A stretch of DNA of 64,000 nucleotides, from sequence record OM319461.1; one strand, 5' to 3'. How positions within the stretch are numbered: the first letter of the stretch is position 1; every line of letters begins with the position of its first letter. This document shows, one piece after another, positions 19,901-61,569 of the stretch. The translations under genes were made by a program, and so were the position numbers. The notes below the pieces were generated by a model, which worked only from the letters and a program-made list of their open reading frames with translations, was not told the origin of the DNA and ran no database searches.

Positions 19901-20641
19901 TACATTGCCATTGGTGCTATCAATCGCTAAACTTGTAATTTGGTTCCAGTCTGGAGCATTAGCGCCACCAGAGATGTCTACCATATTGAAATCATTGGTA
20001 CCTGACAAGAAAGGCATGCGACTGTCATTCAACAAAGCAACATAATCGCCACGTACGTCGATTGCATCCATAGCACCAGTAAAGCCAACTAGATTGATGT
20101 CTTCAAATGATGCTGGTACAAGTGCCTGATTAACACGCAATACAATCTCTTCGTTGGCCATACCCACGTACTCGCCACTAAAGCTAGCTGTTTTAGCAAC
20201 CGCAGTCAGATCACGCAGTTCGATTAAACCGATAACTTCGTCACGTGTTTTGTTGTAAACCTCAACATCGATCTCTGTAACTGCATCACCAGTCGCACTA
20301 AGAGAAATGTCAAGGTCTACTTCAGCATAACGCGGAAAAGTAAACACACTGGCAATCTCGCCAGTTTGTGCATCGATAGTAGGAGTCGGAGTTTCGCTAA
20401 TGAGGTCGTCATTAGAACCATAGAAAGGATCGCGTTTAGCTTTAACGCTAACTACTGCTTTAAGAATAGCTCCGTCGCGGTTAACAAAGCTACCTGCTGC
20501 GTAGTCCTTCGCTGGATCAAATGCCTCAACAACAGATGGACGCATAGAGGTATTCGTAGATGGGAATAGTACCCAATCCAAGTTCTCACCGCCTTCGCGT
20601 TCTGTTTTCTTTAAACGAATAACAAAATCTTTGTTAGCCAT
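16958..20641 (-). CDS. tail-fibre/adhesin-like protein with C-terminal DUF285 (BspA-family) repeats
   Basis: WDTSSVQFMDAMF, LDVSSVVTTEGMFEGNTSFNQDI repeats; N-terminal CBM5/12-like and propeller-like segments; LFQDTRGTKAV..GDEVRFIADQKGNNH motif. Confidence 0.75.
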   Translation of the reverse strand: MANKDFVIRLKKTEREGGENLDWVLFPSTNTSMRPSVVEAFDPAKDYAAGSFVNRDGAILKAVVSVKAKRDPFYGSNDDLISETPTPTIDAQTGEIASVFTFPRYAEVDLDISLSATGDAVTEIDVEVYNKTRDEVIGLIELRDLTAVAKTASFSGEYVGMANEEIVLRVNQALVPASFEDINLVGFTGAMDAIDVRGDYVALLNDSRMPFLSGTNDFNMVDISGGANAPDWNQITSLAIDSTNGNVLANAAGVGLYLRDATTGDWSVIPDGNLRTAQQVLIEDNVIYTIDGFGSELWRFEAGTWTNVKGSLVGPVKGTMLNGLPVVLDASDNQLYQYVPDSGFVQFGNITAGNPQVFAGVNTLFGLDGTNKVYFVSADSTVKVYDQDTDLIEDVTTAADGTFGMYFMRNNTAILLDTSAAPKLVQKGIAGYPIEFTAAGAVIGEETITIPTEMTGPEFVAEEWVSAEGYESFVNPHSPFESYEADSVIYDQHGALWYTDKALAAGAFRDQGWTRMNPEDGIEVGYAYVDPNSNVEQATKITGVFCDVERTDKRIPDAVESFWDTTDKYSLFQDTRGTKAVEKPGDEVRFIADQKGNNHIVFDVPGVFGIYGEDENGRGYVNIDNKMETIKVHKSGSGDNYHMRMAVPNVGMLRSDTLDLETGFAIKASKKSNQPICQLALVPDGTDPVVLAELDAEMRRIADRYAFETLTDLNYFFSEPDTKYVFDGDYSFRFITAMRGMYRYAEVPQDISGFDVSKIVDMGEMFEGATGTIDISKWDTSSVQFMDAMFRRMGAFNASIAELDVSSVVTTEGMFEGNTSFNQDISGLAWTKLANARRMFAESTVFDTPIPSLNAPVLNDISGMFESAAVYNQVFSVNLPLLSKAKGVFKSAALMTQAVSITSGVLTDVGEMFAYTPLFNAPVTIAATTLESTQGMFYQAPVFNSTLVIDFSTVKTATEMFTGAEAFDQATGLNPQSLEVANRMFAGAVALTTNPFTSYVFPRLIEGEEMFDGALALAGGVAFAAPNALKLKAMFRGCAALTGPVSFSATIATSLEELFKDCASLNGTVNISARQALDVNQLFMGCASLANDIVVYVPIATSAKSFLKGATAFNNVLQITSTMFTDMSSFFEGCTSYNQPIDIDMAMVEDCTSFLKGATSFNNSVLDVPFNYIKVIDGFLSDCTAFDQDLSSLCVTNHHVQPTDFVTDDVPMAADAAKQPAWGRLCN

Positions 20642-30224: not shown

Positions 30225-32168
<1,944 letters not shown>

Positions 32169-47183: not shown

Positions 47184-48452
47184 CTATTCTTCGCCGGCGA
47201 TTCTTACTTCGGCTACTGGGTGTTGTTCACCTAGTGTGCCAATAAAGGCATAGGAGTTAGTTTCTTCGCCCATGATCTTAACGTAGGCAGGGACAACTTC
47301 TTTGATGTAGAATTGTTTGCCGTCTGGTAAGACACCTGTTACGAGTTGATTTAGGTCTAGGAGTTCCTCAGCACGAACACAGCGCTCTAGTACCTTGTCT
47401 TCGGTAATAGAGAACAACACATCTTTGTCTGCCGGTGTGTACACCACAGAGTTCCATGGACGACGAATAGGACGACTTAGCATTGTGTTATGATGCGGCA
47501 CTGCAAAATATTCGCTGGCTGTGTCTTCCATGTATGTACTCAGACGTTCGCCAAATTCACTTGTGGATGGAATTAAAACACGAACATCATCATTATCGTC
47601 GATGAGGTATTCGTCTTTTGTTCCGTCTGCCAGTGGGATTACATGTACCTCACCGTCTTGCTGGAAGTCAACTTCAATAGTCAGTGGGGTTCGCTTGTGT
47701 ATCTTTTTGGCAGAGTAGTCGGCAATAAAGTACGTAGCCATTTCTTCAGGAGATGGCGTGCCTTGATATTCCATTGTGATTGCATGTGCCACATAACGCG
47801 GTGGTAATGTAGTTTGAACAAACAACTCATGATGGATTTCCATAGGTACTGGAGACTTGATGTTGTCTGGTACAAAATGGTAGAACGAACAAGCCCGTTT
47901 ATCCTGTATTTTCTTTTCAAAGTCAACAAGACAGATATCACCTAGTTCCCATAACATCTCTTGCATCGTCTTTTCCCACGTAGCCAGATTCCAGCCATCG
48001 TTGTTAGAGGCTTTGGACTTATGGAAGAAAAGCTTGATGGTTGTAAACTGATGCAGGTAAAAGAGAATAGCAAACAGCTCACCGATGTGTTCTTTTTCTG
48101 CGCAGCGCAGTCTCGCAACAAACACGCCATCATCTTCAAAGATATACATTTCGTTCTTTTGGAAAGCCGAAGACAGGCACATGTCTCGAACACCGGAGAT
48201 GTTGATGAGTTCCATGAACAGTTCTTTACCGTGTTCCAGGTTAACAATATGTTCGTCTAATACGCGGCGGATATAGGCATAGTTTGCATCCTTTGTAGCC
48301 TCAATCTTATCTAAAGACTTCTGTGCATCCTTGTTCATCTCTGCATGGTTCTTGTCTACATTAGCGCCGCTTTTTCGAAGTATGTAGCCCAAAGCAAAAA
48401 CAGCAAAGATGATGAACAGCATACCAATGCCAATATAATCTTTCATTTCCAT
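47184..48452 (-). CDS. single-TM hypothetical protein
   Basis: N-terminal TM; TAATG coupling. Confidence 0.75.
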   Translation of the reverse strand: MEMKDYIGIGMLFIIFAVFALGYILRKSGANVDKNHAEMNKDAQKSLDKIEATKDANYAYIRRVLDEHIVNLEHGKELFMELINISGVRDMCLSSAFQKNEMYIFEDDGVFVARLRCAEKEHIGELFAILFYLHQFTTIKLFFHKSKASNNDGWNLATWEKTMQEMLWELGDICLVDFEKKIQDKRACSFYHFVPDNIKSPVPMEIHHELFVQTTLPPRYVAHAITMEYQGTPSPEEMATYFIADYSAKKIHKRTPLTIEVDFQQDGEVHVIPLADGTKDEYLIDDNDDVRVLIPSTSEFGERLSTYMEDTASEYFAVPHHNTMLSRPIRRPWNSVVYTPADKDVLFSITEDKVLERCVRAEELLDLNQLVTGVLPDGKQFYIKEVVPAYVKIMGEETNSYAFIGTLGEQHPVAEVRIAGEE

Positions 48453-49240
48453 TACTTATCTCCGTTACCATGTTTTTGGATAAAGTTTGTAATAAATAGT
48501 TGATTGAGTTCAACTGACTTCAGTACCCGTGCGTTGACTCCGCGTCCAACCAAAACGATTGGTACGTAGTTACCACAAGTTATATCTGGTTCTACATCAT
48601 AGTTGAATTGAACAAAACAATCGCTGTCAGGCAGATAAACAATCTCGCCTTCGCGATAAGACTCACCTGCTTTAAGATGTTTTGTTTCTTCACTCATCTT
48701 TGTGTAGATCCAGTTTGGTTTGTTTGTATAAATACCAGAGTGAGAAGTATTGTACACATACTGACCATAAGCGGGTTCAAATAGTGAGCGAACAGCAAGA
48801 TAATCACGTGCAGTAAAACCACCCACAGAATCGATGTGTACGAGTCGTGGTTGGTGCTCTTCATAATAATCACAGCTATCGTCAATAATGACATAGTCCG
48901 TGATCTCTGGATGATCGGTGAGCAATTTCCGCATGCGATCTCCACGGAAAGAAGTAGGCTTCGGTACACGAGGGCATTTGTGCCATACTAAACCACGATG
49001 AAAACCCATCGCATCAGCTAGCTTATGCAGCATCGCTTTTTCTGAGTTGCTGTTTGTTCCATCCCCGTGATCAGCCCATGTACTGATGAAAGAGATTTTA
49101 AGGTTGTAAAGATGACAAAGATCATTGATCATCTCGATTACGACGGAGTTTATATTGGCAGTTTCGCCTTCCATAAACGTCCAGTGATTTGTGGCTACTT
49201 CATCTATATCTAAGATGAGTAGTCTAACTTCTTCAGACAT
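48452..49240 (-). CDS. HAD-fold protein (Swiss-Army-Knife RNA-repair HAD-like; start MSEEVRL)
   Basis: LILDIDEV, FISTW, YVIIDDS, HIDSVGGF. Confidence 0.75.
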   Translation of the reverse strand: MSEEVRLLILDIDEVATNHWTFMEGETANINSVVIEMINDLCHLYNLKISFISTWADHGDGTNSNSEKAMLHKLADAMGFHRGLVWHKCPRVPKPTSFRGDRMRKLLTDHPEITDYVIIDDSCDYYEEHQPRLVHIDSVGGFTARDYLAVRSLFEPAYGQYVYNTSHSGIYTNKPNWIYTKMSEETKHLKAGESYREGEIVYLPDSDCFVQFNYDVEPDITCGNYVPIVLVGRGVNARVLKSVELNQLFITNFIQKHGNGDK

Positions 49241-49277
49241 CTTGTATCCTTTTATTTTCGTGGCTTCAGTCACTATA

Positions 49278-49290: not shown

Positions 49291-49363
49291 ATGTTTTAAA
49301 TGATCACAACAAATTTTATGCTGCGAGTGCAGCTTAATTACGTAATTGACAGGAGTAACTCCC

Positions 49364-50359
49364 ATGCGGAATACATCATTTCCAATTCGTTACTTGGTGG
49401 CTAAAAAAGAACCAGACGATCCAGATAACTCAACCGGCCGCATGATCGCAGACTCGGTGAATGGTCTGATTGACTTGGTTGGTGCACTGGAAGATAATTC
49501 CAGTTGGCCAGATCCAGACCCTTCTGTGGTGGTAAGCAAAGTACATAACTCTGATTACCCATACTTGGCAGGATCTGAGATCCGCACTGCTTTTGGTTAT
49601 TTCCGTTGTATTTCCAACGTACCTGCCAACAGTAACATTAGTTTGACCAACCGTAACTTTTGGGCTTTAACCCACATGCCTGCTGACGGCGGTGCTGCTT
49701 ATGGCGGCATCTATGATGAAGTAAACGGATACCTTGCCAACACAGCAACAGTACGTCTAACGCCGGACAATGTGATTGTCATGCGTGCGCTGGAAGACAT
49801 CGATCCAGGTACACCGTTTGATCCTGCCCAGTGGCAAGTAGACGCTACATACGACCGTGGCGGCATGCAAGACTGGTCTGGTACCTTTGATGATACTGCA
49901 ACATACGACGCTGGTGTTTTTGTAACATACAACGATGGTGTTTATGTATCTAAGGACAAGATCGAAACAGCAGGTCCATTTGACCCTACAGAGTGGGATT
50001 CGGTTTTCCAAGTGAATACCACGACTCTTTTTAACATCAAGTGCTTTATTCAAGACACCACCGATGATGATGAAGAGATCTTTATTGAAGTTGTTACACA
50101 AGACTTTGTCTTTAAGCAAAACTTCCCTAACTCAGTTGCCGTTGCAGCTACAGCTGCCGAAGCAGATACCTCTCTGGTTATCTTGCATGGTGTAACCCAG
50201 ATTGGTACTATCAACTTTGCTGCTGGTAGTACTTCAGGTACGTTTGTTTCTACCGGCGACGTTTCAGTAACAACTGGCGATCTAATCGCTCTAAAACAAA
50301 ACGGTACCGCTGACAAAACACTGGCTAACATTTCCATTACTTTGGAGGGCTTGATGTAA
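49364..50359 (+). CDS. tail-fibre-associated protein with CBM5/12-like repeats
   Basis: AGGAG SD; YDAGVFVTYNDGVY..FDPTEW modules; N-terminus homologous to 60384 gene. Confidence 0.75.
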   Translation: MRNTSFPIRYLVAKKEPDDPDNSTGRMIADSVNGLIDLVGALEDNSSWPDPDPSVVVSKVHNSDYPYLAGSEIRTAFGYFRCISNVPANSNISLTNRNFWALTHMPADGGAAYGGIYDEVNGYLANTATVRLTPDNVIVMRALEDIDPGTPFDPAQWQVDATYDRGGMQDWSGTFDDTATYDAGVFVTYNDGVYVSKDKIETAGPFDPTEWDSVFQVNTTTLFNIKCFIQDTTDDDEEIFIEVVTQDFVFKQNFPNSVAVAATAAEADTSLVILHGVTQIGTINFAAGSTSGTFVSTGDVSVTTGDLIALKQNGTADKTLANISITLEGLM

Positions 50360-51708
50360 TGAGTTTTCTTTTCATCTTTAACGAGTCTCATGGCTTTACG
50401 ACAGAAGCTGGAGTAGGTAATACCGATCACGACCAACGTGTGATACTGAATCCGATCTATCCTCAGTTTCGTGATCCAATGTTCAGTCGTGGTCACGCAC
50501 AGACAGGCAGTCACGCTCTTGGCAAAGGATGGTTTGTAACCGAACCACCTGCGAATACCTCATCGGATATCTGGTTCCATTTTCGTTCTCTTGTTTTGTC
50601 TTCTGGTTCATCAGCTTGGGCATTTACGACTCCTGCTGGTACAGGTCGTCATTTTGAATTGCGGATAGAAAACAGCAGAGCGAGAATTGTCGACTTTGCT
50701 GGTCGTGATGCCTCGGTGGATATAACTGGCTCAGGCGACCAATCGGATTTCGACGTCAAAATCAACTTCGGTACGGGTGCCTTTGAAATTTTCCAAGATG
50801 GTTTATCTAAAGGTAGCGGTACACACTCATGGATCGTTGACATGGGTCTAGACTGTTATCTTAAGTCTGGTCTTCGTGGGGCTGCAAGTACAGCGTTTAC
50901 CGAGATGATCATCACCGAAGCCAAACCTACGATTGGTATGCGCGTCGCTACGCTTGCTCCAGAAGCAGCTGCGTCAGACAATAACCTCGAAGGTGATATT
51001 GCGACAGTTAATGAAGTATCGCTAAGTAACGACGGTATGACTACAGATGGTGCTGGTAACTTTATGTTTGACTATACCGACATTGATGCAGGCATTGACA
51101 TGAGTCAGTACAACATCGCAGCTGTAACGGTATCTACTGTCTCTACGGCCGACGAAACATTTGTTGACAAGTTCGTACAGAACGCAGTTCGCATTAATGG
51201 CAATATCCATGCGCCATATGACTTCCTTGTGTCTGATACGACAAGTGATTCGAAGTCACTAAATACGATCATGACAACAAACCCAGAAACGGGAGCAGCT
51301 TGGACAGAAGCCGACATCAATGCACTAGAAGCTGGCGTTGCTATTGGTCAGCCTGATCTGAAGATTCGTATTGCAAGTGATGGTAGCTTACGCGGATGGC
51401 GTACAGAAGGTAGTACTTTCGGTACCCTGCTTGGTGGTAAAGACGAGTCAATCGTTGATGCATTCTATTATTCTGTGGACAGTGACTACCTGCTACTAAG
51501 TCCAAAGACCGCTAGTGGCGGTTGGCATGGCAGTACGAGCGCACGTATTCATCTGTTGTTTGAAGACGGCACCTACTTTGTTACGAACACCATGTCCTAC
51601 AATACTGGTTTTGGTGGCAGCTTTAAGTCTAGTCGTAACGATACACTAGAAGCCAAGTTCAATGCGAGTGTTGGTCAAGTACTGAATGCTTGGGTAGAAA
51701 CATTTTAA
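50359..51708 (+). CDS. adhesin/fibre paralog 1
   Basis: WFHFR, EMIITEAKPTIGMRV, NPETGAAWTEADINALEAGV. Confidence 0.75.
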   Translation: MSFLFIFNESHGFTTEAGVGNTDHDQRVILNPIYPQFRDPMFSRGHAQTGSHALGKGWFVTEPPANTSSDIWFHFRSLVLSSGSSAWAFTTPAGTGRHFELRIENSRARIVDFAGRDASVDITGSGDQSDFDVKINFGTGAFEIFQDGLSKGSGTHSWIVDMGLDCYLKSGLRGAASTAFTEMIITEAKPTIGMRVATLAPEAAASDNNLEGDIATVNEVSLSNDGMTTDGAGNFMFDYTDIDAGIDMSQYNIAAVTVSTVSTADETFVDKFVQNAVRINGNIHAPYDFLVSDTTSDSKSLNTIMTTNPETGAAWTEADINALEAGVAIGQPDLKIRIASDGSLRGWRTEGSTFGTLLGGKDESIVDAFYYSVDSDYLLLSPKTASGGWHGSTSARIHLLFEDGTYFVTNTMSYNTGFGGSFKSSRNDTLEAKFNASVGQVLNAWVETF

Positions 51709-51718
51709 GGAGTAAGAA

Positions 51719-53077
51719 ATGACTTTCTTATTTATTCAAAACGAAGCCAATGGTGAAGTTTCTGTAAACGACGAAACCACAGCACGTGACCCGCGTCGTG
51801 GCTTGGTAGCTACGGGCGGTGGCTTTGACCCGGTGTTTTCTCGTGGTCGCGTAGAAGTAGAGAGCCGAAACTTTGCATATGCCAGCATGAAGATGACGGG
51901 TGCATCGAGTGACGCTACGGTTCTGTGGATCCATGCCATGATCTATGTTCAGAATGGGTACTCCAATGGCCTCATCAACTTTGGCTATGACGGTGTTCCG
52001 AATGCAGAGGGCTTTCGTATTGAAGGTGGTTCAGGCGAGGTTCGCATTAAGAACCTGAGTGGCACAGAGATCGGCGCTAAAGCAGTCGCAGATGGAAACC
52101 ACCACGTAGACGTAATGCTGAATACAGATACTGGCGCTTTTGCTTTTTATGTCAATGGCGTTAATGAAGCCTCTGGTACTTCGGCAATTGTTTCTAGTTT
52201 CAAACCAAGTCTTTGGGATTCTGTTCAGATTCGTAAAGTATCTGCTGGACGCAGTGCTTCAGAAGTAATCGTTACCGAAGGTGAAATCACCATTGGCATG
52301 CGCGTTATCTCTCTTGTTCCAGAAGCAAACGGCACACATACTGACTTTACTGGCGATGTGAGTACGGTTAGTGAATTGTCACTTAACCCAGACGGCGTGA
52401 CATCTACGGGGGCAGGTAAACACACGTTTGCTTATACTGATCCGGATGCTGCAATCGACTTTAGTACATACGACATTAAAGCAGTCGCTGTGTCTAGTGT
52501 CGCATCAGCTGAAGCTGGCATGGAACAAAACTATATGCGTAATGTCTTGAAAACGGATGCGGATGAACACAGCCCAGTTGTCGGTCGTTTACTAGACACT
52601 GTAAGTGGCCGAGGTTCTTTAAATGAACTCTACGAAGTAAACCCTAACACGGGCGCAGCATGGACAGAAGCAGAAATCAAAGCTGCTGAGTTTGGCGTGA
52701 ATTTAGAAACACCGCCACTATTCGTCCTTCGTTTTGATGTTCGTTATGATGATACAAATATTGCTGGTTACTATGCTTACGGCGTACCTACCGGCGATTT
52801 AGTTGCTTCGATTACGAGTACAGACAGAACTGGTCATGATCGTCCTTATTTTCTTTATGGCGATAAGAGCGACGGCCGTGTTGTCGCGGCATTTGGTACT
52901 GGCGGCGGCAACAAAGTAGACGGTAAGGATTCTATTACTTTCCGCTTTGTTGACGAAGACGGCGCAGAGACTACGAAAGTATTTCCGTACTCGGGTGACT
53001 ATCGAGTTACTGACGCTACCTTGGTTAACTGGTTCCATGCCCGTGCCGGTAAAGCAGTAAGCGTTTACGTAGAATAA
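51719..53077 (+). CDS. adhesin/fibre paralog 2
   Basis: WIHAMIY, EVIVTEGEITIGMRV, NPNTGAAWTEAEIKAAEFGV. Confidence 0.75.
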   Translation: MTFLFIQNEANGEVSVNDETTARDPRRGLVATGGGFDPVFSRGRVEVESRNFAYASMKMTGASSDATVLWIHAMIYVQNGYSNGLINFGYDGVPNAEGFRIEGGSGEVRIKNLSGTEIGAKAVADGNHHVDVMLNTDTGAFAFYVNGVNEASGTSAIVSSFKPSLWDSVQIRKVSAGRSASEVIVTEGEITIGMRVISLVPEANGTHTDFTGDVSTVSELSLNPDGVTSTGAGKHTFAYTDPDAAIDFSTYDIKAVAVSSVASAEAGMEQNYMRNVLKTDADEHSPVVGRLLDTVSGRGSLNELYEVNPNTGAAWTEAEIKAAEFGVNLETPPLFVLRFDVRYDDTNIAGYYAYGVPTGDLVASITSTDRTGHDRPYFLYGDKSDGRVVAAFGTGGGNKVDGKDSITFRFVDEDGAETTKVFPYSGDYRVTDATLVNWFHARAGKAVSVYVE

Positions 53078-53091
53078 CACAGGAGCCCATA

Positions 53092-54489
53092 ATGGCAATT
53101 TTATTTATGCAGAATGAACTGTCTGGTACGGTAACGGATCCTAACTATTACTTTACTAGCAGTGACGTTCGTGCACAGGTTGACACGAATGTGGATGCTT
53201 TTGACCCAGAAGCTCAACGACGTGCAACCCCAAGACCGAACTATAACTTCAGTCCATTTCAAGTCAGTCCTCCTCCAGGTGACACCAAGAAATACTGGGT
53301 GCATTTTCGTTTCAATCAACGCAATGATACCTCGCGTTATGTGAAGTTACAGATCGGAGAACACCCATCGTCACCAAGCTCCAATACGAATACAGTAATC
53401 ACGGTTGGTTATAGCGATGGCCGTATTCAGTGTCAGGCAGCTGGCGAATACTGTTACGAAACAGGCAAATACGACAAAGCTGCACAAACCGAAATCGACC
53501 TACATGTTGATTCGAATACGGGCTACTTCGAAGTATATTGTAACGGTGCTCTAATTAAGGCAGGTACGAGTAACAGTGCCAAGTCTAGTTATAAAATGCT
53601 CTATGTCTGGATTGATGGCGGCAGTACGATTCCAATTAGTGAACTGATCATCACGGAAGACGAGCCTACACTAGGTATGCGTCTATTGACTCTGACGCCG
53701 GACGCTTTGGCATCGGGCAAAATGAGCGGCGATATCTCAGACATTACTGAGATCGGCCTGGATGAAGCAGCTATGGAAACAGAAGTAGCTGGTGCGAATC
53801 TTTTCAGTCTTACCGATGTACACAACACCTTTGCCTCTAATTCTGACCTCATTATTCGTGCGATCGATGTGAAAGCATTGGTAAGCAAGTCGGCTGCATC
53901 TGAACTAGAATATGCCCAGATGACAATCAAGACGGATGGCGAGGTTCACAAAGAACTCGCGCCTAAGCAGATCACTGCTACGTCCCCTGGTCGTGCTCTG
54001 AGTGCTTTCCATGAAGTCAATCCTAAGACAGGTAAGGCATGGACAGTAGCCGAAGTAAATACACTGGAAGCGGGCGTAGAGTTTGCTGGAACAGTTGCGG
54101 ATGTAGACTTCATTCCACACATTACCTTCACTACTGCCAATAGCAATAACAACTACCAAGGTTACCGCAAAGATAGTACTACCTTGAACAATCTTATTTC
54201 TGGCGGTACATGGTACGACGAGAATGGTATTCCGGGTGGATTCATTGAATCAGTGGAATGGCAAAACAACCACGGTCGTGGTATTTTTAAAACCAACGAT
54301 GGCCGCAAGTGGGCTCATGGTCCAAATGGCGTTCGATTGCATTTCCGCGAGACAGATGGAAATATCCAGACCGAACAGATTCCTTGGAATAATACAGCCA
54401 AGGACTATCGTCGTGACGGCGGCTATTTCTACTCATGGCTGAAAGATCGCGCAGGCCAAGTTCTTGAAGTAATGATTGAAGGTTATTAG
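53092..54489 (+). CDS. adhesin/fibre paralog 3
   Basis: WVHFRF, ELIITEDEPTLGMRL, NPKTGKAWTVAEVNTLEAGV. Confidence 0.75.
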   Translation: MAILFMQNELSGTVTDPNYYFTSSDVRAQVDTNVDAFDPEAQRRATPRPNYNFSPFQVSPPPGDTKKYWVHFRFNQRNDTSRYVKLQIGEHPSSPSSNTNTVITVGYSDGRIQCQAAGEYCYETGKYDKAAQTEIDLHVDSNTGYFEVYCNGALIKAGTSNSAKSSYKMLYVWIDGGSTIPISELIITEDEPTLGMRLLTLTPDALASGKMSGDISDITEIGLDEAAMETEVAGANLFSLTDVHNTFASNSDLIIRAIDVKALVSKSAASELEYAQMTIKTDGEVHKELAPKQITATSPGRALSAFHEVNPKTGKAWTVAEVNTLEAGVEFAGTVADVDFIPHITFTTANSNNNYQGYRKDSTTLNNLISGGTWYDENGIPGGFIESVEWQNNHGRGIFKTNDGRKWAHGPNGVRLHFRETDGNIQTEQIPWNNTAKDYRRDGGYFYSWLKDRAGQVLEVMIEGY

Positions 54490-54501
54490 GAGATTTAATT
54501 T

Positions 54502-55824
54502 ATGGCTGTTTTAGCTATCCTAGGTGATGTTACACCTATCGTTGCTTCTGCTGACTACCTGGGTTCTGGTGACCCACGTACACGCCTAGAGGCATCTAAC
54601 CTACCTGGTTCTTTTGACAAAGTAGAATTTGAATCAGGTCAAACAGTTAAGTTTGCTGAAAATGTTCCTAAAGATATTTGGATCCACTTCCGCTATGCCA
54701 ATAACGGTGCTTCACTCAATGCAACGGCACAGTTTAGTTTGGTTGCCAATGACGGTACGTACAAACTGCGTATCGGTTCTGGTGGTGGAGATCAATTCTT
54801 CCTTAATGCCCAGCAGCCTGGCGGCGGTACGGCAAGTGCACCAGCACAGACTGCGGCAGTTGCGGACATAGACGTCCATTTCTACAATAACCGCGTGACA
54901 TTCTACGTGGATGGAAACCAAATCCATGATACTACTTTCTCGATCGTCAATGCAACGTTTAATAGCATTGCACTGGTGACACACCAACCAGACGTGAGTG
55001 AAGTAATCATTGCTGACGAAGATACTCGTGGTTGGCGACTAGCCAAGCTAGATCCAGAAGCAGCTGGTAGCTTCGATGAGTTTGGTGGTATTGTAGATAG
55101 CATTAACACTGAAGACCTTACTGCGGACTCTGTAAGCGCTGATGGTCCAATGAAACAGTCTTTCCAATACTCTGACTTTAGTACAGATGCAAACGCCGCT
55201 GGACTACAAGTTCATTCATTGGTACTTGGCTCTGTTGTTAACACTGCTGGTAATCCTGCTGCCCCTATATTCCGCCACATGGTTACGAATGGCACGGATG
55301 TTGGCTACGGTCCAAATGCATCTGCCCCTGATGCCGACGGTGCTCTAGCTCCGCAATTAGACATTATGGAAGTTAACCCACTGACAGGCAATGCTTGGAC
55401 AATGGCGGAAATCGATGCTCTTGAGTTTGGTGCAGAGTCTTTCTTGTGGGACATGCGTATTCGTGACTTTGGTGCAAGTGGTTCATTGTATGGCATCAAG
55501 AAAGCTTCTGGCTTCTCAGAAGCCTACGACAAGAACCCGGCTGCCGGCTATACTCAGTTCGAATACTTTTACGAACAAAGCGACAAAGTAGTGATTCAGG
55601 CCACCACAGAAACCGTCAGTGCATGGGGTGACAACATCGTGGTGCTCATCAAGGGTGCCGATACAGACGAGATCTTCTCTTTCAAAGCGAAGCGCAATGG
55701 TGGTACTATCGGTGACCGCGAATACTGGGAAACGACCAATGGCGATCCAGAAGCAGCAAAGGTTCGTTCCATGATGTCAGCTAACGCTACAACTGGTCTT
55801 TGGATTTTTGTCCGAGCAGCTTAA
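54502..55824 (+). CDS. adhesin/fibre paralog 4
   Basis: WIHFRY, EVIIADEDTRGWRL, NPLTGNAWTMAEIDALEFGA. Confidence 0.75.
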   Translation: MAVLAILGDVTPIVASADYLGSGDPRTRLEASNLPGSFDKVEFESGQTVKFAENVPKDIWIHFRYANNGASLNATAQFSLVANDGTYKLRIGSGGGDQFFLNAQQPGGGTASAPAQTAAVADIDVHFYNNRVTFYVDGNQIHDTTFSIVNATFNSIALVTHQPDVSEVIIADEDTRGWRLAKLDPEAAGSFDEFGGIVDSINTEDLTADSVSADGPMKQSFQYSDFSTDANAAGLQVHSLVLGSVVNTAGNPAAPIFRHMVTNGTDVGYGPNASAPDADGALAPQLDIMEVNPLTGNAWTMAEIDALEFGAESFLWDMRIRDFGASGSLYGIKKASGFSEAYDKNPAAGYTQFEYFYEQSDKVVIQATTETVSAWGDNIVVLIKGADTDEIFSFKAKRNGGTIGDREYWETTNGDPEAAKVRSMMSANATTGLWIFVRAA

Positions 55825-55873
55825 GTTTAACTGAGGGAGTAAACCTCCCTCTCCTTTTGGAGAAAACAAAATG
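55822..55873 (+). repeat. about 50-bp intergenic repeat with hairpin, copy 1
   Basis: TAAGTTTAACTGAGGGAGTAAACCTCCCTCTCCTTTTGGAGAAAACAAAATG. Confidence 0.9.
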
Positions 55874-57172
55874 TCAATTCTTTTAACAGTTAACCCTGCT
55901 TCACTGCCGGTTACTGCTGGTCAAGCTTATTCAGCCAATGACATTCGTACACTTGCTGTAGATGCTACGGCCGACGACACAATGACAAACTGGAAGTTTC
56001 CAGATTGTAACTCTAAGGCACATAGTCGCTTATCAATGAAATCCACTCCAACGAGTACGTTGTGGTTCCATGCGCGCGTCAAGCGCACAGTTAGTTCTTT
56101 TGAGATAGGCGTTGAGTTTTATGGCCAGCCAAGCGGCTATTCCTCTACCTATAAAGACTACTGGGGGCTACAGGTTACCCCATGGTTTATGATGCATACG
56201 CGAAACCAGACACAGCAGAATAACCAGAGCTTTAGTGGTACATTCCCTGCCGAGGGTTCTGACTGGTTTGATTTTGATTTAGAAATGGGTTCTGGCAAGG
56301 TTTACATCAACGGTAGCTTGGAGCATGATTACTCTGGAAGTTACATACTGGGTACTGACTCCAGTGCTTTCCAATTCCGAATCCAAGGTGGCGAGATAAC
56401 AGAAATGGTTGTCGCCAACGAAGATACTCGAAACTGGCGTGTCGCTTCAGAAGTACCAGCCTCGCTTGTTTCTAGTACGTTTAGTGGCGATGTAGTCAAC
56501 ATTCAAACGCCTGGTCTGACCAAAGATGGTTTGAGTTCTGGCGGTGCCGGTGCAGAGTTTGTGGCCAAGATGCCTGTTGTCCCTGGTGGTTACAAAGTAG
56601 CTGGTCATACAATCAATACCATCGCCGAAACAAATGGTACTCCAGAATCACCAATGCTTGCTTATATCTTAGACGGCAACCTGCTAGGTTTGCATAGTAC
56701 AGACAGTGATGGTGAAAATGTCCCTAACTCGTTTGTGCATGAGACCAAACCATCGGATGGTTCCAACTGGTCGACTGCTGATTTATCAGAACGAGAGATC
56801 ACAGTAATCAACCCAGTTGAACACTACTTCAACACTGCGCAGATTACAAGTGGTGTCTATGGTACTGGTGGTGCGGCACAATTTGTCAAAGGCGGCGAAT
56901 GGGATGGCGGTGGTGCTATTGAACTACAGCATGCTTATAGTGCACGTAACCTTTGGATCTTCTGTGATGCCGACACCAATCGTAAGTGGGGCACATCGGA
57001 CAAGATTCATGTTTATTACACTCGCCGAGATGTAGCAGGACAACCTACCGTTAACCGCGTCCTAACATGGGATGATACTACGGGTGGCTACAAGTCCGGA
57101 CTGAGCAATGATGACTTTGATGTAATCTCTGCTTCCGGTATGCAGATGAAAATGTACATCCTGCCACTTTAA
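55871..57172 (+). CDS. adhesin/fibre paralog 5
   Basis: WFHARVK, EMVVANEDTRNWRV, KPSDGSNWS. Confidence 0.75.
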   Translation: MSILLTVNPASLPVTAGQAYSANDIRTLAVDATADDTMTNWKFPDCNSKAHSRLSMKSTPTSTLWFHARVKRTVSSFEIGVEFYGQPSGYSSTYKDYWGLQVTPWFMMHTRNQTQQNNQSFSGTFPAEGSDWFDFDLEMGSGKVYINGSLEHDYSGSYILGTDSSAFQFRIQGGEITEMVVANEDTRNWRVASEVPASLVSSTFSGDVVNIQTPGLTKDGLSSGGAGAEFVAKMPVVPGGYKVAGHTINTIAETNGTPESPMLAYILDGNLLGLHSTDSDGENVPNSFVHETKPSDGSNWSTADLSEREITVINPVEHYFNTAQITSGVYGTGGAAQFVKGGEWDGGGAIELQHAYSARNLWIFCDADTNRKWGTSDKIHVYYTRRDVAGQPTVNRVLTWDDTTGGYKSGLSNDDFDVISASGMQMKMYILPL

Positions 57173-57221
57173 GTTTAACTGAGGGAGTAATCCTCCCTCT
57201 CCTTTTTGGGGAAAACAAATG
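57170..57221 (+). repeat. about 50-bp intergenic repeat with hairpin, copy 2
   Basis: TAAGTTTAACTGAGGGAGTAATCCTCCCTCTCCTTTTTGGGGAAAACAAATG. Confidence 0.9.
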
Positions 57222-58496
57222 ACTATTCTAGCAACAATTAGTCCGGGTTCAATCACGATTCCTGCTGGCGATTCGTTCGGACCAGATTCGGTTCGTCAAA
57301 AAGTGGTAGATGTATCCGCAGAGGATACGATGACTAACTGGGCATTAAACGACTGGTCAAGTGCTAGTGATGCCCGTGTGTACTTCCAACAAGCTCACTG
57401 TTCTACTGACGAAGGTATGTGGCAACACACTCGCCTCAAGTGGACTGGCGACGCTGGTCTGCGTATCTTCTACTGGGATGAAACAAAGACTAAGCGCATG
57501 TCCATTAACTTACAGCGTGGCTCTTGTTACGGCGCAAGTATTGGTGGTGGCTCTGGCTCAACAGTTACCTTTACTCCATTCGATCTTAATAAATGGATCG
57601 ACATCGATATCGAGTTTAAGAAGACTGATGGTTGGCGTCTTTTCGCAGATGGTACACAGATCGCATCTGGCGATTTCGCATGGCCTGCTGACTGCAACCT
57701 ATTGAGTTGCACATTTGCAATTCCGACTAACCTGAACCTCACCGAGGGTGTTATTTCAACAACAGACACTCGTGGTTGGCGTATCCAATCAGAAGTACCT
57801 GCTTCTATGGTTCTGAATGGTTTTGCTGGTGATATTGCTGAGCTGCAAACTTTGGCTCCAGACCAAGGTGGTGTAAGTTCCACGGGTGTCGGCTCAACTG
57901 CGAAGTTTGACTTTACCGCTGTACCTACCGACATGAATATTGCGGCTGTTAACTTTTCTACAATCAGTGATACGTCTGGTGCTACTGAGTCGCCTTATCT
58001 TGCACAGATCTTGGAAGAGAATGGCAATCGCCACTTCGTTGGCTTTATTGCGGTTACTGCTGACTCAGAAGACAATCCAACAACGTTTGTTTCTGATGTA
58101 AACCCGACCGATGGTTCCGTCTGGACACCTGCGGTGATCAATGCCTCTACTCTTTCAGTCGAGAATGTACACTATCAAGCTTTCTCTTCTGCGGCAGTAA
58201 GCGGAGGTTATGGTCTTGACTCAGGCGGCGCAGACTGGACGGATGGCACCACGATGAGTATCAAGGTTGACTCAGGTGCACGTACCGTCCGAGTTTTCAA
58301 TAAAGGCGACGATACTGTCAAATACGGAACGGCCGATGATCTTTACCTATGGCTTTGGTTGGACGACTTATCTAAAGAGTTCAAAGGCAAAGTAACATGG
58401 GATGGAAACGGCTATGTGGCCGCTACGGATGATACCAACTACAATATGGTTATTTCCGCCGGCATCAACATGGCAATGACATTTGTTGCACTATAA
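57219..58496 (+). CDS. adhesin/fibre paralog 6
   Basis: WQHTRLK, EGVISTTDTRGWRI, NPTDGSVWT. Confidence 0.75.
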   Translation: MTILATISPGSITIPAGDSFGPDSVRQKVVDVSAEDTMTNWALNDWSSASDARVYFQQAHCSTDEGMWQHTRLKWTGDAGLRIFYWDETKTKRMSINLQRGSCYGASIGGGSGSTVTFTPFDLNKWIDIDIEFKKTDGWRLFADGTQIASGDFAWPADCNLLSCTFAIPTNLNLTEGVISTTDTRGWRIQSEVPASMVLNGFAGDIAELQTLAPDQGGVSSTGVGSTAKFDFTAVPTDMNIAAVNFSTISDTSGATESPYLAQILEENGNRHFVGFIAVTADSEDNPTTFVSDVNPTDGSVWTPAVINASTLSVENVHYQAFSSAAVSGGYGLDSGGADWTDGTTMSIKVDSGARTVRVFNKGDDTVKYGTADDLYLWLWLDDLSKEFKGKVTWDGNGYVAATDDTNYNMVISAGINMAMTFVAL

Positions 58497-58506
58497 GGAG
58501 TAACGC

Positions 58507-60387
58507 ATGAGTACAACAACACCAGAAATTCTTGGTGATTCAGGTACAATTGCCATACTGCATGTCTTTCAAAAAGACGGACCAGTAGACTTAGAGATTA
58601 CTTTAGGTGCCACTACCACGGGTGCCACGTCAATTAACGTGGAAGTTAAGAACCTTGATTTTGGTCTTACTTACGACACACTTGAGTTTACTGGCCTGAC
58701 TAGTACCACGTCAACAGTTACGAAAACAATAACTGTGGCAGGTACAACAGGGGAAGTAGTTGGTTTGGTGGCCAATCAAACAGGCGGTACAAACGTCTGG
58801 GTTGATTCTAGTATTGCAGTGCCAACCACTGGCATTGAGCATGCAACTGCTGGCTCACGTAACATCTGGATGTCGGCTAATACCAGTCTTTATGTTTATG
58901 AACAAAACGCCTGGGTACAGATGGCCAATGATCCTGGCATCAGTGCCATTAGTGCACTTGGTATTGATGCAACGTCAGACAGTGCCCTTGTGGTTGATTC
59001 TGCTGGCAATAAGATCTATCGTGTTACACGTGATGATGTTTGGACCGACGTAACCAATGGCGAAGATGTCTCTACTGTAGACTGTATTGCTGGTACAGGC
59101 GATACTGAAATTGCCATTACTAAAGCAGATGGTTCGATTCGTGTTTATGATGGCTCTGCTTGGACAGACAGAAACGACAACAGTCAACGTGCTTTGTACA
59201 TCCAGTATGACGCTTTCAGTAACTTACGTTATCGTCGAGCTGTGGCCCCGTATGCCGAGAAGACCTGGAGTGGTTCATCCTGGGATGGTGTGTCCGGTTT
59301 TGGTACTGTGACAGCGCTACACTATGCTTTCCGTGGTACTGTACCGTCGGACGACCTTACTGTAGCTGGTATTACTAATGCTGGTAGCAATTGGACGCAA
59401 ACAGAAAACCGCATTCGCTATGGCAATGGCACTGCTCATGTATGGACCAACGACCCAGATCCTTCTGTGATCAATTACCAAGGTGGCTTCCACTTAGGTA
59501 CTGACGAACACATTGTCCATGATGACAAGATCGTTACGGTTGATACGCAATACGAAATCAATTTCGAAGGTCTAAGTGTTACAGAGGTAGTACAGACGAA
59601 TGGTCCACACGTACATCACTTGATGCGTGAAACAATACTGACACCTGATGCTGGTCCTCATGTTCATCACTTGATGCGCGAGGCGATACTTACACCTGTC
59701 TTGGCAAAAGCAACATTGCAGAAGCAAGCAGTATCGGTTGTTATCAAGCCACCACCACCCGAAGTCACACTTCAGAAGCAAGCTGTCTCGGTTGTTGTTC
59801 AACCTAAACCAGCCAATCTGAAACTCCAGAAGCAAACCGTTTCCGTAGTATTGGAACCTTTGCCACCCGAACTAAAACTTCAGAAGCAAACGATCTCGGT
59901 TGTACTGGAAGCTAAACCTGCTGGTCCATACGTTAACCATCTTGTATCGGAAGCCGTACTAAAACCAGATCCAGGCCCAGCTGTAAAACATATTGTTTCG
60001 GAAGCAGTCTTGAAACCTGACCCAGGTCCGGCAATCAAGCATATGGTTTCAGAAGCAGTATTGGTGAAGGCTGAAGAACTGAAGGTATTGAAACAGACAG
60101 CTTATGCGGTATTGAAACCTAAGTCAGGTCCAAATATTCTTAAGCAATCTGGTTATGCGGTACTGAAGCCTAAGACTGGCCCTAACGTACTTAAGCAGTC
60201 TGCTTATGCTGTACTGCGTCCGTCTCTGGTTAACCGAGTACACAAACAGTCCGTTACTGTATTGATGAAGCCTAAGACGGTTGTATCGCTACACAAAGCT
60301 TCTGTGACGGTCCTTGTGCGTACGATTCCGCTTAGGAAGAAACGTCGCTTTGTTTCACAGCATGTCGTGGAGATTAAATCATCATGA
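58507..60387 (+). CDS. fibre-associated protein with C-terminal 17-18-aa repeat array (putative scaffold)
   Basis: Beta-rich N-terminus homologous to 1227-aa protein; 14 tandem repeats. Confidence 0.75.
   Translation: MSTTTPEILGDSGTIAILHVFQKDGPVDLEITLGATTTGATSINVEVKNLDFGLTYDTLEFTGLTSTTSTVTKTITVAGTTGEVVGLVANQTGGTNVWVDSSIAVPTTGIEHATAGSRNIWMSANTSLYVYEQNAWVQMANDPGISAISALGIDATSDSALVVDSAGNKIYRVTRDDVWTDVTNGEDVSTVDCIAGTGDTEIAITKADGSIRVYDGSAWTDRNDNSQRALYIQYDAFSNLRYRRAVAPYAEKTWSGSSWDGVSGFGTVTALHYAFRGTVPSDDLTVAGITNAGSNWTQTENRIRYGNGTAHVWTNDPDPSVINYQGGFHLGTDEHIVHDDKIVTVDTQYEINFEGLSVTEVVQTNGPHVHHLMRETILTPDAGPHVHHLMREAILTPVLAKATLQKQAVSVVIKPPPPEVTLQKQAVSVVVQPKPANLKLQKQTVSVVLEPLPPELKLQKQTISVVLEAKPAGPYVNHLVSEAVLKPDPGPAVKHIVSEAVLKPDPGPAIKHMVSEAVLVKAEELKVLKQTAYAVLKPKSGPNILKQSGYAVLKPKTGPNVLKQSAYAVLRPSLVNRVHKQSVTVLMKPKTVVSLHKASVTVLVRTIPLRKKRRFVSQHVVEIKSS
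59602..60330 (+). repeat. 14 tandem coding repeats of about 51-54 bp
   Basis: GPHVHHLMRE.. x2, LQKQ.VSVV x4, H.VSEAVL x3, LKQ..YAVL x3, HK.SVTVL x2. Confidence 0.9.
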
Positions 60388-60869
60388 GTGATATCCAATA
60401 CATCGTATCGACCGATGCTCCAGAAAACCCATTAAACAGTACAGGTAAAGACTTGGCACTGGTGGTCAACACCATCATCGATTTAACAGGTGCATTGATT
60501 GATCGTAACTCTGAACCACCAATCAATCCGGACGTCAATACTTATACGGCGTTTAACAATAATATCAGTTATTCGTTTGGTGACGAAATCCGAACACCCA
60601 AAGGGTACTTTCGTGCAATTCAGGACATTCCTGTAAATCCAGGATATGGTTTTGCTAATATGAATGCCTGGCTTGTGTTCTATGTTCCGAATATTGATGG
60701 TAAGCCTTTTGCTGGTTTACATACACCCGGTTTCCAATATCCAAAGGGTGTTTACCTAGCCAAGATCGAAGGTAGCAACATGCGTGTTCTGCGCACAGTA
60801 AACGACATCGAGCAAGGTTCTTTGTTTGTTGAAGCTGACTTTGTTCAAGAATACAGCTATACACTTTAA
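60384..60869 (+). CDS. fibre-associated protein, paralog of 49364 N-terminus
   Basis: NSTGKDLALVVNTIIDLTGAL / GDEIRTPKGYFRAI vs NSTGRMIADSVNGLIDLVGAL / GSEIRTAFGYFRCI. Confidence 0.75.
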   Translation: MSDIQYIVSTDAPENPLNSTGKDLALVVNTIIDLTGALIDRNSEPPINPDVNTYTAFNNNISYSFGDEIRTPKGYFRAIQDIPVNPGYGFANMNAWLVFYVPNIDGKPFAGLHTPGFQYPKGVYLAKIEGSNMRVLRTVNDIEQGSLFVEADFVQEYSYTL

Positions 60870-60878
60870 GGAGTAGAA

Positions 60879-61523
60879 ATGCATCACGAGTTATTCATTG
60901 TTCGTGTTGTGGGTTACAACGGGGTGGTTTTCACCCCGACTAACCTATACATTACGAACTCCTTTATGTATCATCGCTATGTGGAAAACGCCGTTTACAA
61001 CTACCGCGAAGGTATTGAGTTTCTTGTCGACTCTATCGAGGATAACGAAGATCGCGGGGTGCTTGTGCTTAATGGCGATACGGCCACATATCGTGACGGT
61101 GAAGGTTTGGGTACATCTCCAGTTAAAGTTTATACTGCGCTGATTCCGCAATTCGACAATACAACTGAATATGCGAATGAGGACGTCGTTTACTTTTCTG
61201 GACGTGCCTATTTCCGTAACCGTGCTGGTTCGGGTAACTGGAATCGAAACGACTGGACAGAAATCATCGGTGGGCATACTTTAAGTACACTAACGTACTA
61301 TCTGCACTTTGATCTTTCCGGTGGTGACCGACAGTTAGGTGAAGGTACATTCTTCTATGGTGACACACTGGAGTTTGCTGAGAAACCATTCAAGCCTGAG
61401 GAATCATACAAGATAGACACTGGCGAAATTGAAATTGTCAAGGATATCAATGACCGGTTCTTTGAGCAGTTTTATGCCGACTATGCCATTCATGATGGTA
61501 CGGTGTTACACGAAGAATTTTAG
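60879..61523 (+). CDS. fibre-associated protein with CBM5/12-like module
   Basis: FDNTTEYANEDVVYFSGRAY...W; AAGGAG SD. Confidence 0.7.
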   Translation: MHHELFIVRVVGYNGVVFTPTNLYITNSFMYHRYVENAVYNYREGIEFLVDSIEDNEDRGVLVLNGDTATYRDGEGLGTSPVKVYTALIPQFDNTTEYANEDVVYFSGRAYFRNRAGSGNWNRNDWTEIIGGHTLSTLTYYLHFDLSGGDRQLGEGTFFYGDTLEFAEKPFKPEESYKIDTGEIEIVKDINDRFFEQFYADYAIHDGTVLHEEF

Positions 61524-61545: not shown

Positions 61546-61569
61546 CCTACCTGCCTTCGGGCAGGTAGG
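61546..61569. terminator. bidirectional terminator between convergent genes
   Basis: CCTACCTGCC-TTCG-GGCAGGTAGG; A-run on left, T-rich on right. Confidence 0.85.

What the first reader, a model, noticed from the sequence alone, without database searches (positions are those of the whole stretch)
59602..60387. Putative combinatorial docking scaffold: 14 beta-strand repeats in six blocks next to six adhesin paralogs
The 626-aa protein ends in Pro-linked 17-18-aa units with alternating hydrophobic residues. They sort into six sequence blocks: (HHLMRE)x2, (TLQKQAVSVV)x2, (KLQKQTxSVVL)x2, (HxVSEAVL)x3, (LKQxxYAVL)x3 and (HKxSVTVL)x2. Six block types directly downstream of six paralogs suggests each block is a donor strand that docks a specific adhesin. 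That would be a scaffoldin-like branched fibre whose repeat counts set subunit stoichiometry. Hyperbranched fibres with a hub protein are known in Klebsiella jumbo phage phiKp24, but I do not know of a short-peptide strand-code scaffold. The repeat structure is seen directly; the docking role is inference.
Basis: partly seen in the sequence, partly recalled or inferred. Interest (0 to 1): 0.85.

Follow-up and report, generated by a model that had tools for sequence, protein, structure and literature searches.

The report
Strand-repeat adaptor beside lectin-like tail proteins
A Vibrio jumbo phage protein ends in 14 short beta-strand repeats, and the same repeat sits next to the same lectin-like tail genes in about 20 unrelated phage loci, so it is probably an undescribed adaptor holding several host-binding proteins on the tail, though binding is not shown.

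Summary
The window is the first 64 kb of Vibrio jumbo phage C-ZP2022.

**What is there.** ORF 58507-60387 (626 aa) ends in 14 tandem units of 17-18 aa at 59602-60324. Lag-17 self-identity has z = 15.9. Six genuine paralogs with a LamG/ConA-like fold lie directly upstream. "Six blocks" is not robust: clustering gives five types, and six needs a subjective split.

**The wider pattern.** No Pfam, NCBIfam or annotated PHROG family, and no PDB sequence, matches the unit.
- It sits beside paralog-family genes in about 20 independent phage loci.
- That includes all 10 distant hits I looked up.
- Single-paralog loci carry a mini-protein, usually three units of one type plus a basic, hydrophobic tail.
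- Multi-paralog loci carry multi-type arrays.
- Some arrays are fused to a distal tail protein or to carbohydrate-binding-like heads.
- Within blocks, synonymous sites are near saturation, so the peptides are held by selection.

Paralog number correlates with unit-type number (rho about 0.6, p < 0.01). The two are exactly equal in only 7-8 of 17 loci.

**Verdict.** The most likely reading is a tail adaptor or scaffold that holds the lectin-like proteins. The strict one-block-one-adhesin code is unproven. A trimeric shaft or an assembly chaperone remain live rivals. No physical evidence exists.

The parts
49346..50359 (+). W0, first gene of the cassette. Its N-terminal ~160 aa are homologous to W8. 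Its C-terminal ~110 aa are a tail-fibre-like domain. The true start is probably the ATG six codons in, as in pir03 and L003.
   Evidence: The C-terminal part matches PHROG tail-fibre families. W0 is 34% identical to W8 over 156 aa at E 8e-27. Orthologues open the cassettes of sm033, L003 and L006.
50359..51708 (+). Paralog W1 (449 aa), lectin-like tail protein
   Evidence: Family HMM E 1e-85. The AF2 model (pLDDT 59) has a jelly roll at about residues 60-190. Foldseek matches it to galectin, LamG and CBM40 folds and to phage virion proteins.
51719..53077 (+). Paralog W2 (452 aa)
   Evidence: Weak Laminin_G_3 match. 46% identical to G3 of L003.
53092..54489 (+). Paralog W3 (465 aa)
54502..55824 (+). 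Paralog W4 (440 aa)
   Evidence: phrog_6368 at E 8e-31. tblastn finds relatives in 38 phage records, some annotated as virion protein.
55871..57172 (+). Paralog W5 (433 aa)
   Evidence: 67% identical to G4 of L003.
57219..58496 (+). Paralog W6 (425 aa)
   Evidence: 67% identical to G5 of L003.
58507..59601 (+). W7 N-terminal domain (residues 1-365). It is all-beta by a low-confidence model and has no family match. It is absent from the sm033 homologues.
   Evidence: Only 29-34% identical to the L003 orthologue.
59602..59712 (+). W7 block A, 2 units (HVHHLMRE type)
59713..59934 (+). W7 block B, 4 units (LQKQxVSVV type).
59935..60087 (+). W7 block C, 3 units (HxVSEAVL type)
60088..60240 (+). W7 block D, 3 units (LKQxxYAVL type). 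This is the type most widespread in other phages.
60241..60324 (+). W7 block E, 2 units (HKxSVTVL type)
60325..60387 (+). W7 C-terminal tail: a Lys/Arg patch, a final hydrophobic strand, then the stop codon. The same kind of tail ends most unit proteins, including the 66-79-aa mini-proteins.
60384..60869 (+). W8 (161 aa). Its start overlaps the W7 stop. It is homologous to the N-terminus of W0. It is conserved only in the Vibrio-phage cassettes.
60879..61523 (+). W9 (214 aa), last gene of the cassette, conserved in both sm033 cassettes
61546..61569 (.). Bidirectional terminator-like hairpin (10-bp stem, 7 G-C pairs) between W9 and the convergent gene

Best explanation
W7 is a tail-associated adaptor or scaffold.

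**Proposed mechanism**
- Its last 261 residues form a string of 14 short beta-strand units. Each unit has a core of about 10 residues and a Pro/Gly-rich spacer of 6-8 residues.
- The units fall into five or six sequence types.
- Each unit is proposed to be a docking site for one of the lectin-like (LamG/ConA-fold) proteins encoded just upstream. Binding is most likely by addition of the strand to an edge of a beta-sheet.
- The final basic patch plus hydrophobic strand fixes the array to the tail.
- The phage would thereby display several different carbohydrate-binding heads from one polypeptide. This fits the broad host range reported for its 98%-identical twin, pir03.

**Shown:** the repeat anatomy; the paralog family and its fold class; the conserved pairing of the two gene families across very different phages; selection on the peptide sequence of the units.

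**Inferred:** physical binding, the binding mode, unit-type specificity, stoichiometry and the anchoring role of the tail.
For: 1. **Conserved adjacency.** Unit proteins lie immediately next to paralog-family genes in these places:
 - the window and pir03;
 - both sm033 cassettes;
 - T5-like phage VCPH;
 - the metagenome relative L003;
 - IMG/VR loci L007, L008, L010 and L011;
 - Loktanella phage pCB2051-A and Brevundimonas phage Poludnitsa;
 - all 10 distant hits of the exhaustive HMMER search.
2. **One paralog, one mini-protein.** Single-paralog loci mostly carry a protein with three units of one type plus the basic tail: P0007, P0010, P0009, L010 and LOKG_00042. P0005 has four units, and the L007 array has six units fused to a distal tail protein. 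In VCPH, two paralog genes are each followed by their own 3-unit mini-gene.
3. **Headless forms.** The sm033 proteins (207 aa) and the mini-proteins (66-79 aa) contain only units and the tail, so the units must be the working surface.
4. **Structural fusions.** Units are fused to the N-terminus of DUF2460/Rcc01695-type distal tail proteins (P0008, L007). They are also fused behind F5/8-type-C-like and CBM_4_9-like heads, on weak sub-threshold Pfam matches (P0003, P0006). In Vibrio phage 1.169.O gp82 they lie between domains.
5. **Selection on the peptides.** Within blocks, 56% of codon pairs that encode the same residue use different codons. About 64% is expected at saturation. The blocks are therefore old, and their peptide sequences are maintained.
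6. **Numbers track.** Paralog number correlates with unit-type number (rho 0.58-0.61) and with unit number (rho 0.69).
7. **Gain together.** L003 and sm033 cassette 1 share both a G2/S1c-type paralog and an xxDVV-type block in second position. The window lacks both.
8. **Virion context.** Relatives of the paralogs are annotated as virion proteins. pir03 lyses 31 of 51 Vibrio strains (PMC7765460).
Against: - There is no interaction, structure or virion-proteome evidence for any unit protein.
- The single-sequence AF2 model of W7 is uninformative (pLDDT 34.5). No multimer prediction was possible.
- Unit types equal paralog number in only 7-8 of 17 loci. Heterogeneous arrays (P0002, P0006, L011, Poludnitsa) give many singleton types.
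- L027 has two paralogs but one unit type.
- Under a colinear mapping, W5 and its 67%-identical orthologue G4 would face different block types.
- Adjacency alone would also follow from a chaperone role, or from two parts of one fibre.
- Some phages have paralog genes with no recognisable unit protein nearby (L009, DSS3phi2).
- The loci are not phylogenetically independent.
Confidence: 0.5

Rival explanations
1. The units are shaft repeats. W7 trimerises through them into a beta-structured stalk. The 365-aa N-terminal domain would be its own receptor-binding head, and the C-terminal tail its virion anchor. The paralogs would be separate fibres or decorations that attach elsewhere, and the blocks would only keep the three chains in register.
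For: - One strand per unit at regular 17-18-aa spacing recalls fibre shaft repeats. The low-confidence AF2 model gives one strand per unit.
- Many unit arrays follow a head-like domain: W7, P0003, P0006, P0011, L010 and Poludnitsa_260.
- The W7 N-domain evolves fast, 29-34% identical to the L003 orthologue, while the units stay 55-73% identical. This is the pattern expected of a head and a stalk.
Against: - Headless proteins made only of units (sm033 207 aa; 66-79-aa mini-proteins) make little sense as stalks that carry nothing.
- It does not explain why the number of unit types and units rises with the number of adjacent paralogs.
- It does not explain why each VCPH paralog has its own mini-gene.
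- The core pattern is a single strand followed by a long Pro-rich spacer. No PDB sequence matches it.
Confidence: 0.2
2. The unit proteins are assembly chaperones for the paralogs. They would be analogous in gene position to tail-fibre assembly proteins, with one unit type per client. W7 would be a fusion of several such chaperone segments. They may act transiently and be absent from the finished virion.
For: - Small genes directly downstream of receptor-binding genes are the classic position for fibre chaperones.
- The mini-proteins of 66-79 aa fit that size.
- One type per paralog would also produce the observed correlation.
Against: - There is no match to any tail-fibre assembly family in Pfam, NCBIfam or PHROGs.
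- Arrays are fused to a structural baseplate protein (DUF2460) and to carbohydrate-binding-like heads, and lie inside a multi-domain tail protein of phage 1.169.O. This points to a permanent structural role.
- The conserved basic, hydrophobic C-terminal tail looks like an anchor.
Confidence: 0.15
3. The units are flexible Pro-rich linkers or direct cell-surface-binding peptides. They would have no specific partner among the paralogs, and the co-location would reflect only shared membership of the distal tail module.
For: - In phage 1.169.O gp82, two units sit between two domains, as a linker would.
- The cassettes lie at the end of tail modules, where many unrelated genes cluster.
Against: - Near-saturated synonymous divergence with conserved peptide cores argues against mere linkers.
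- Adjacency holds across myo-, sipho- and podophage genome contexts, where other neighbours are not conserved.
Confidence: 0.08

Closest known systems
Dual-RBP systems of Klebsiella podophages KP32/K11/KP34: the conserved N-terminal docking peptide of RBP2 binds the T4gp10-like branching domain of RBP1 (PMC13352976)
   Same: A short conserved peptide mediates the attachment of an extra receptor-binding protein. This gives a branched, multi-specificity adsorption apparatus.
   Different: - There, the peptide is on the incoming RBP and the folded acceptor domain is on the primary fibre. Here, the peptides would be arrayed up to 14 times on the scaffold, and the folded partner would be the lectin-like protein.
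- No T4gp10-like domain was detected in W0-W9.
- The partners here have a LamG-like fold rather than being beta-helical depolymerases.
Hyperbranched fibres of jumbo phage phiKp24 and the branched tailspike complexes of CBA120 and G7C (PMC9700779)
   Same: A jumbo myophage carries many receptor-binding proteins, and one protein is proposed as the hub.
   Different: The hubs there use large N-terminal structural domains with T4gp10-like docking folds. Here, the candidate hub surface is a tandem array of 17-aa strands, and its mini-forms are only 66-79 aa long.
Cellulosome scaffoldin (cohesin-dockerin)
   Same: One polypeptide with tandem docking modules of several types recruits different carbohydrate-active or carbohydrate-binding subunits.
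   Different: Cohesins are folded domains of about 150 aa, and dockerins are calcium-binding modules. Neither was detected here. The units here are single strands. This is an analogy, not homology.
Donor-strand complementation in chaperone-usher pili
   Same: The proposed binding mode is a strand from one protein completing or extending a beta-sheet of another.
   Different: There are no usher or chaperone genes, and no evidence that the paralog fold lacks a strand. Nothing about this mode was tested here.
Evolved distal tail proteins of siphophages that carry carbohydrate-binding modules (named from established knowledge)
   Same: In P0008 and L007, the units are fused to a DUF2460-type distal tail protein next to a lectin-like gene. 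This would put sugar-binding modules around the tail tip.
   Different: The binding module would be attached non-covalently through units rather than inserted into the distal tail protein chain.
Tail-fibre assembly chaperones encoded downstream of fibre genes
   Same: The gene position and the small size of the mini-proteins are alike.
   Different: There is no sequence-family match. The unit arrays are fused to structural proteins.

Membership tests
phrog_6368-type LamG/ConA-like phage tail proteins (applies to the six paralogs) | Significant match to the family profile over about 330 residues | tested here: met
   Five of the six match phrog_6368 at E 3e-8 to 8e-31. All six match the iterated family HMM at E 1e-63 to 1e-90.
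phrog_6368-type LamG/ConA-like phage tail proteins (applies to the six paralogs) | Lectin-like jelly-roll fold | tested here: inconclusive
   The AF2 model of W1 has mean pLDDT 59, with residues 60-190 at 60-84. Foldseek gives probability 1.0 to galectin, LamG and CBM40 folds. Pfam Laminin_G_3 matches only at E 0.01-0.05.
Branched RBP systems with a T4gp10-like branching domain | A T4gp10-like branching or docking domain in a primary fibre | tested here: not met
   No such Pfam or PHROG match in W0-W9. No PDB sequence match for W7 or for the paralog profile.
Branched RBP systems with a T4gp10-like branching domain | A conserved N-terminal docking peptide on the secondary RBPs | tested here: inconclusive
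   The paralogs share a short hydrophobic N-terminal strand, with M1 and L4 invariant. Its role is unknown.
Cellulosome-type scaffoldin | Cohesin and dockerin domains | tested here: not met
   No Pfam match.
Trimeric beta-structured fibre shaft (triple beta-spiral or triple beta-helix) | Homotrimer with interlocked repeats | not testable with these tools
   Only monomer prediction was available, and the W7 model is unusable. There is no PDB sequence match.
Tail-fibre assembly chaperones | Match to a known assembly-protein family | tested here: not met
   No match in Pfam, NCBIfam or PHROGs for W7, the sm033 or VCPH proteins, or the mini-proteins.
Chaperone-usher donor-strand complementation | An acceptor fold lacking a strand, plus usher and chaperone genes | not tested
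   No such genes were seen in the cassette. The model quality is too low to judge whether a strand is missing.
The 17-aa strand-unit family itself (defined here) | At least two tandem units with the core h-x-[KH]-x-x-x-[YSE]-[AV]-V-L plus a Pro/Gly spacer, usually ending in a basic patch and a hydrophobic strand | tested here: met
   13 of the 14 W7 units score against the iterated unit HMM. HMMER finds 10 distant relatives among 1.84 billion representative proteins.

The most novel reading that the evidence does not exclude
A widespread, undescribed way of building multi-specific phage tails. One polypeptide carries a tandem "strand code" of 17-aa units. Each sequence type recruits a particular lectin-like receptor-binding protein. 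The type content of the array would then decide which heads the virion displays, and the copy number how many. The same principle would scale from 3-unit mini-adaptors in small siphophages to the 14-unit hub in this jumbo phage.
Probability: 0.3. Interest if true: 0.85.

Novelty: new variant of a known kind. Interest (0 to 1): 0.7.

Why it matters
- How phages with many receptor-binding proteins mount them on the virion is known for only a few systems, all based on T4gp10-like branching domains.
- Here, a two-gene module recurs in Vibrio, roseobacter, Brevundimonas and many uncultured phages of all three tail morphologies. It pairs a lectin-like tail protein with a strand-repeat protein. No curated family or solved structure covers the repeat.
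- If the units are docking sites, this is a new and very compact solution to multivalent display.
- It would also annotate a large set of hypothetical genes at the ends of tail modules.
- It would make the composition of a phage's adsorption apparatus partly readable from sequence.
- If the units turn out to be a shaft or a chaperone, the conserved gene pair still defines a new tail-module component.

Tried and rejected
**Searches that found nothing**
- The word-indexed protein search with the repeat piece found nothing. With the full protein it found only pir03.
- IMG/VR scans found no relatives when queried with the repeat piece or with alignments of W9, W8 and W0. A JGI metagenome scan with W8 also found none.
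- The six-paralog alignment had no stretch conserved enough to scan with.
- PDB sequence searches with W7, its repeat region, P0002 and the paralog profile found nothing.
- No paper mentions C-ZP2022. The roseophage R4C structure paper does not describe the module.

- The single-sequence model of W7 is unusable.
- Comparing C-ZP2022 with pir03 for co-varying changes gave nothing. W7 differs at five residues and the paralogs are 92-99.8% identical. The 77% reported for W4 was an artefact of joined BLAST pieces.

**Analyses abandoned**
- My first count of four paralogs per sm033 cassette was wrong. The first gene of each cassette is W0-like, which leaves three.
- An automatic window-based clustering of units merged neighbouring units and was dropped.
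- Genes downstream of unit proteins are not conserved outside the Vibrio-phage group, so they are not a third universal component.
- I did not run a permutation test of a colinear block-to-gene mapping. Shared synteny between related cassettes would confound it.
Full report
**Identity of the window.** The window is the first 64 kb of Vibrio phage C-ZP2022 (OM319461.1), a 288-kb jumbo phage isolated on V. parahaemolyticus. It is 98% identical to the V. harveyi myophage vB_pir03 across the 24 kb compared (window 40000-64000). pir03 lyses 31 of 51 Vibrio strains from several species (PMC7765460).

**The observation.**
- ORF 58507..60387 (+) encodes 626 aa.
- From residue 366 (nt 59602) it consists of 14 tandem units of 17-20 aa. 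A 20-residue tail follows, made of a Lys/Arg patch and a final hydrophobic strand.
- TRF sees 51- and 54-nt periods.
- Self-identity at lag 17 has z = 15.9 against shuffles. The N-terminal 365 residues show nothing comparable.
- Each unit has a core reading roughly h-x-[KH]-x-x-x-[YSE]-[AV]-V-L, followed by a Pro/Gly-rich spacer.
- Clustering the cores gives five types: A x2, B x4, C x3, D x3, E x2.
- The six upstream genes (50359-58496) are true paralogs, 18-32% identical over their full length. Five match phrog_6368, a family of unknown function.
- An AF2 model of W1 (pLDDT 59) has a jelly roll at about residues 60-190. Foldseek matches it to galectins, LamG domains, CBM40 and other generic lectin-like folds. 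It also matches many uncharacterised phage proteins of about 330 aa, some annotated as virion proteins.
- "Adhesin" is therefore plausible but not shown.

**The cassette.**
- Genes W0 to W9 (49346-61523) are tightly packed on one strand. The W7 stop overlaps the W8 start. A strong bidirectional hairpin follows W9.
- W0 has a tail-fibre-like C-terminus. Its N-terminal domain is homologous to W8.
- The same cassette occurs twice in Vibrio phage sm033. Each copy has a W0-like gene, three paralogs, a 206-207-aa protein that is nothing but 11 units in three blocks plus the basic tail, and then W8-like and W9-like genes.
- A metagenomic relative (L003) has five paralogs and a W7 orthologue. All of its contigs break inside the repeat array.

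**The wider family.**
- An exhaustive HMMER search of 1.84 billion representative proteins with the repeat region found 10 distant relatives.
- I looked up the contigs of all ten. Every one lies directly downstream of one or more genes of the paralog family, verified with an iterated HMM. They usually sit at the end of a tail module, after the tape measure, distal tail and hub genes and before the lysis genes.
- The same pairing appears in these loci:
 - IMG/VR loci found through the paralogs (L007, L008, L010, L011);
 - T5-like Vibrio phage VCPH;
 - Loktanella phage pCB2051-A and Brevundimonas phage Poludnitsa;
 - Vibrio N4-like phage 1.169.O, where two units lie inside a multi-domain protein next to two paralogs.
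- Single-paralog loci mostly carry a mini-protein of three units of one type plus the basic, hydrophobic tail. P0005 has four units, and the L007 array has six units fused to a distal tail protein.
- In VCPH, two paralog genes are each followed by their own 3-unit mini-gene. Their unit types recur as blocks in the 336-aa array that follows the third paralog.
- In P0008 and L007, the units are fused to the N-terminus of a DUF2460/Rcc01695-type distal tail protein.
- In P0003 and P0006, the units follow heads that resemble F5/8-type-C and CBM_4_9 domains, on weak sub-threshold Pfam matches.
- No Pfam, NCBIfam or annotated PHROG family, and no PDB sequence, covers the unit.

**Selection.** Within blocks, 56% of codon pairs that encode the same residue use different codons. 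About 64% is expected at saturation. The blocks are therefore old duplicates, and their peptide sequences are maintained by selection. They are not recent slippage products.

- Across 17 complete loci, paralog number correlates with the number of unit types (Spearman 0.58-0.61, permutation p 0.006-0.009). It also correlates with the number of units (0.69, p 0.001).
- The two numbers are exactly equal in only 7-8 loci. Arrays with heterogeneous units break the rule. The loci are not phylogenetically independent.
- L003 and sm033 cassette 1 share both a G2/S1c-type paralog and an xxDVV-type block in second position. The window lacks both.
- A strictly colinear mapping is contradicted. W5 and its 67%-identical orthologue G4 would face different block types.

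**Interpretation.**
- Three facts argue that the units are the functional surface of a structural adaptor for the lectin-like proteins: the conserved pairing, the headless forms and the fusions to structural tail proteins.
- The strict "one block, one adhesin, counts set stoichiometry" code is possible but not established.
- A homotrimeric shaft and an assembly-chaperone role remain live rivals.
- The closest known principle is the conserved docking peptide of secondary RBPs, which binds T4gp10-like branching domains in Klebsiella phages (PMC13352976; PMC9700779). Here the geometry would be inverted, with peptides arrayed on the hub, and no T4gp10-like domain is detectable.

**Limits.**
- No multimer prediction, virion proteome or interaction data were available.
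- The W7 model is unusable.
- Unit registers for the clustering were set by eye from tool outputs.

- a 7-residue motif of the adenovirus fibre tail;
- schematic hydrophobic patterns of the adenovirus and reovirus shaft repeat;
- a schematic pattern of a T4 needle repeat.

All peptide strings used in scripts were copied from tool outputs.

Noticed in passing
window 20718-22835 (-): The ribonucleotide reductase small subunit is 705 aa. The two halves of the Ribonuc_red_sm profile are separated by an insert of about 330 aa (roughly residues 116-449). The insert matches only PHROGs of mixed annotation. This may be an intein or a homing-endonuclease insertion, but no intein family was detected.
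   Followed up: partly
window 16958-20641 (-): A 1227-aa protein with five DUF285 repeat stretches (E 3e-54). This is an unusual large repeat protein for a phage.
   Followed up: no
window 55833-55851 and 57181-57199 (+): Two nearly identical G+C-rich hairpins, each followed by a T-run, lie in the two longer intergenic gaps before paralogs W5 and W6. They could be internal attenuators or RNA-stability elements within the cassette.
   Followed up: no
window 60384-60869 compared with 49346-49850: W8 is a stand-alone copy of the N-terminal domain of W0 (34% identity, E 8e-27). The cassette therefore begins and ends with the same domain. VCPH instead has three copies of the W0 C-terminal domain (V_820, V_187, V_123).
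   Followed up: partly
L003, L004 and L005 (Logan contigs): The L003 and L004 contigs of the five-paralog relative end at the same point inside the repeat array, and L005 ends earlier in the same gene. The array breaks short-read assemblies, so such genes are probably under-represented in metagenome catalogues.
   Followed up: no
L026:4465-4839 (DSS3P8 gp013), L013:7642-7998 (RcXuper gp11), L031:579-2918 (RD-1410Ws-07 gp72): These genes lie upstream of paralog-family genes. They carry a different strand repeat of about 19 aa (a hydrophobic run followed by [DST]-G). In RD-1410Ws-07 it lies inside a gene annotated as structural protein. It may be a divergent form of the unit.
   Followed up: partly
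window 48452-49273 (-): A HAD_SAK_2 (RNA-repair-type HAD) domain protein is encoded divergently from the cassette. It holds the same position in the metagenomic relative L003.
   Followed up: no
window 30225-32162 (-): A complete NAD-dependent DNA ligase, with adenylation, OB, HhH and BRCT domains.
   Followed up: no
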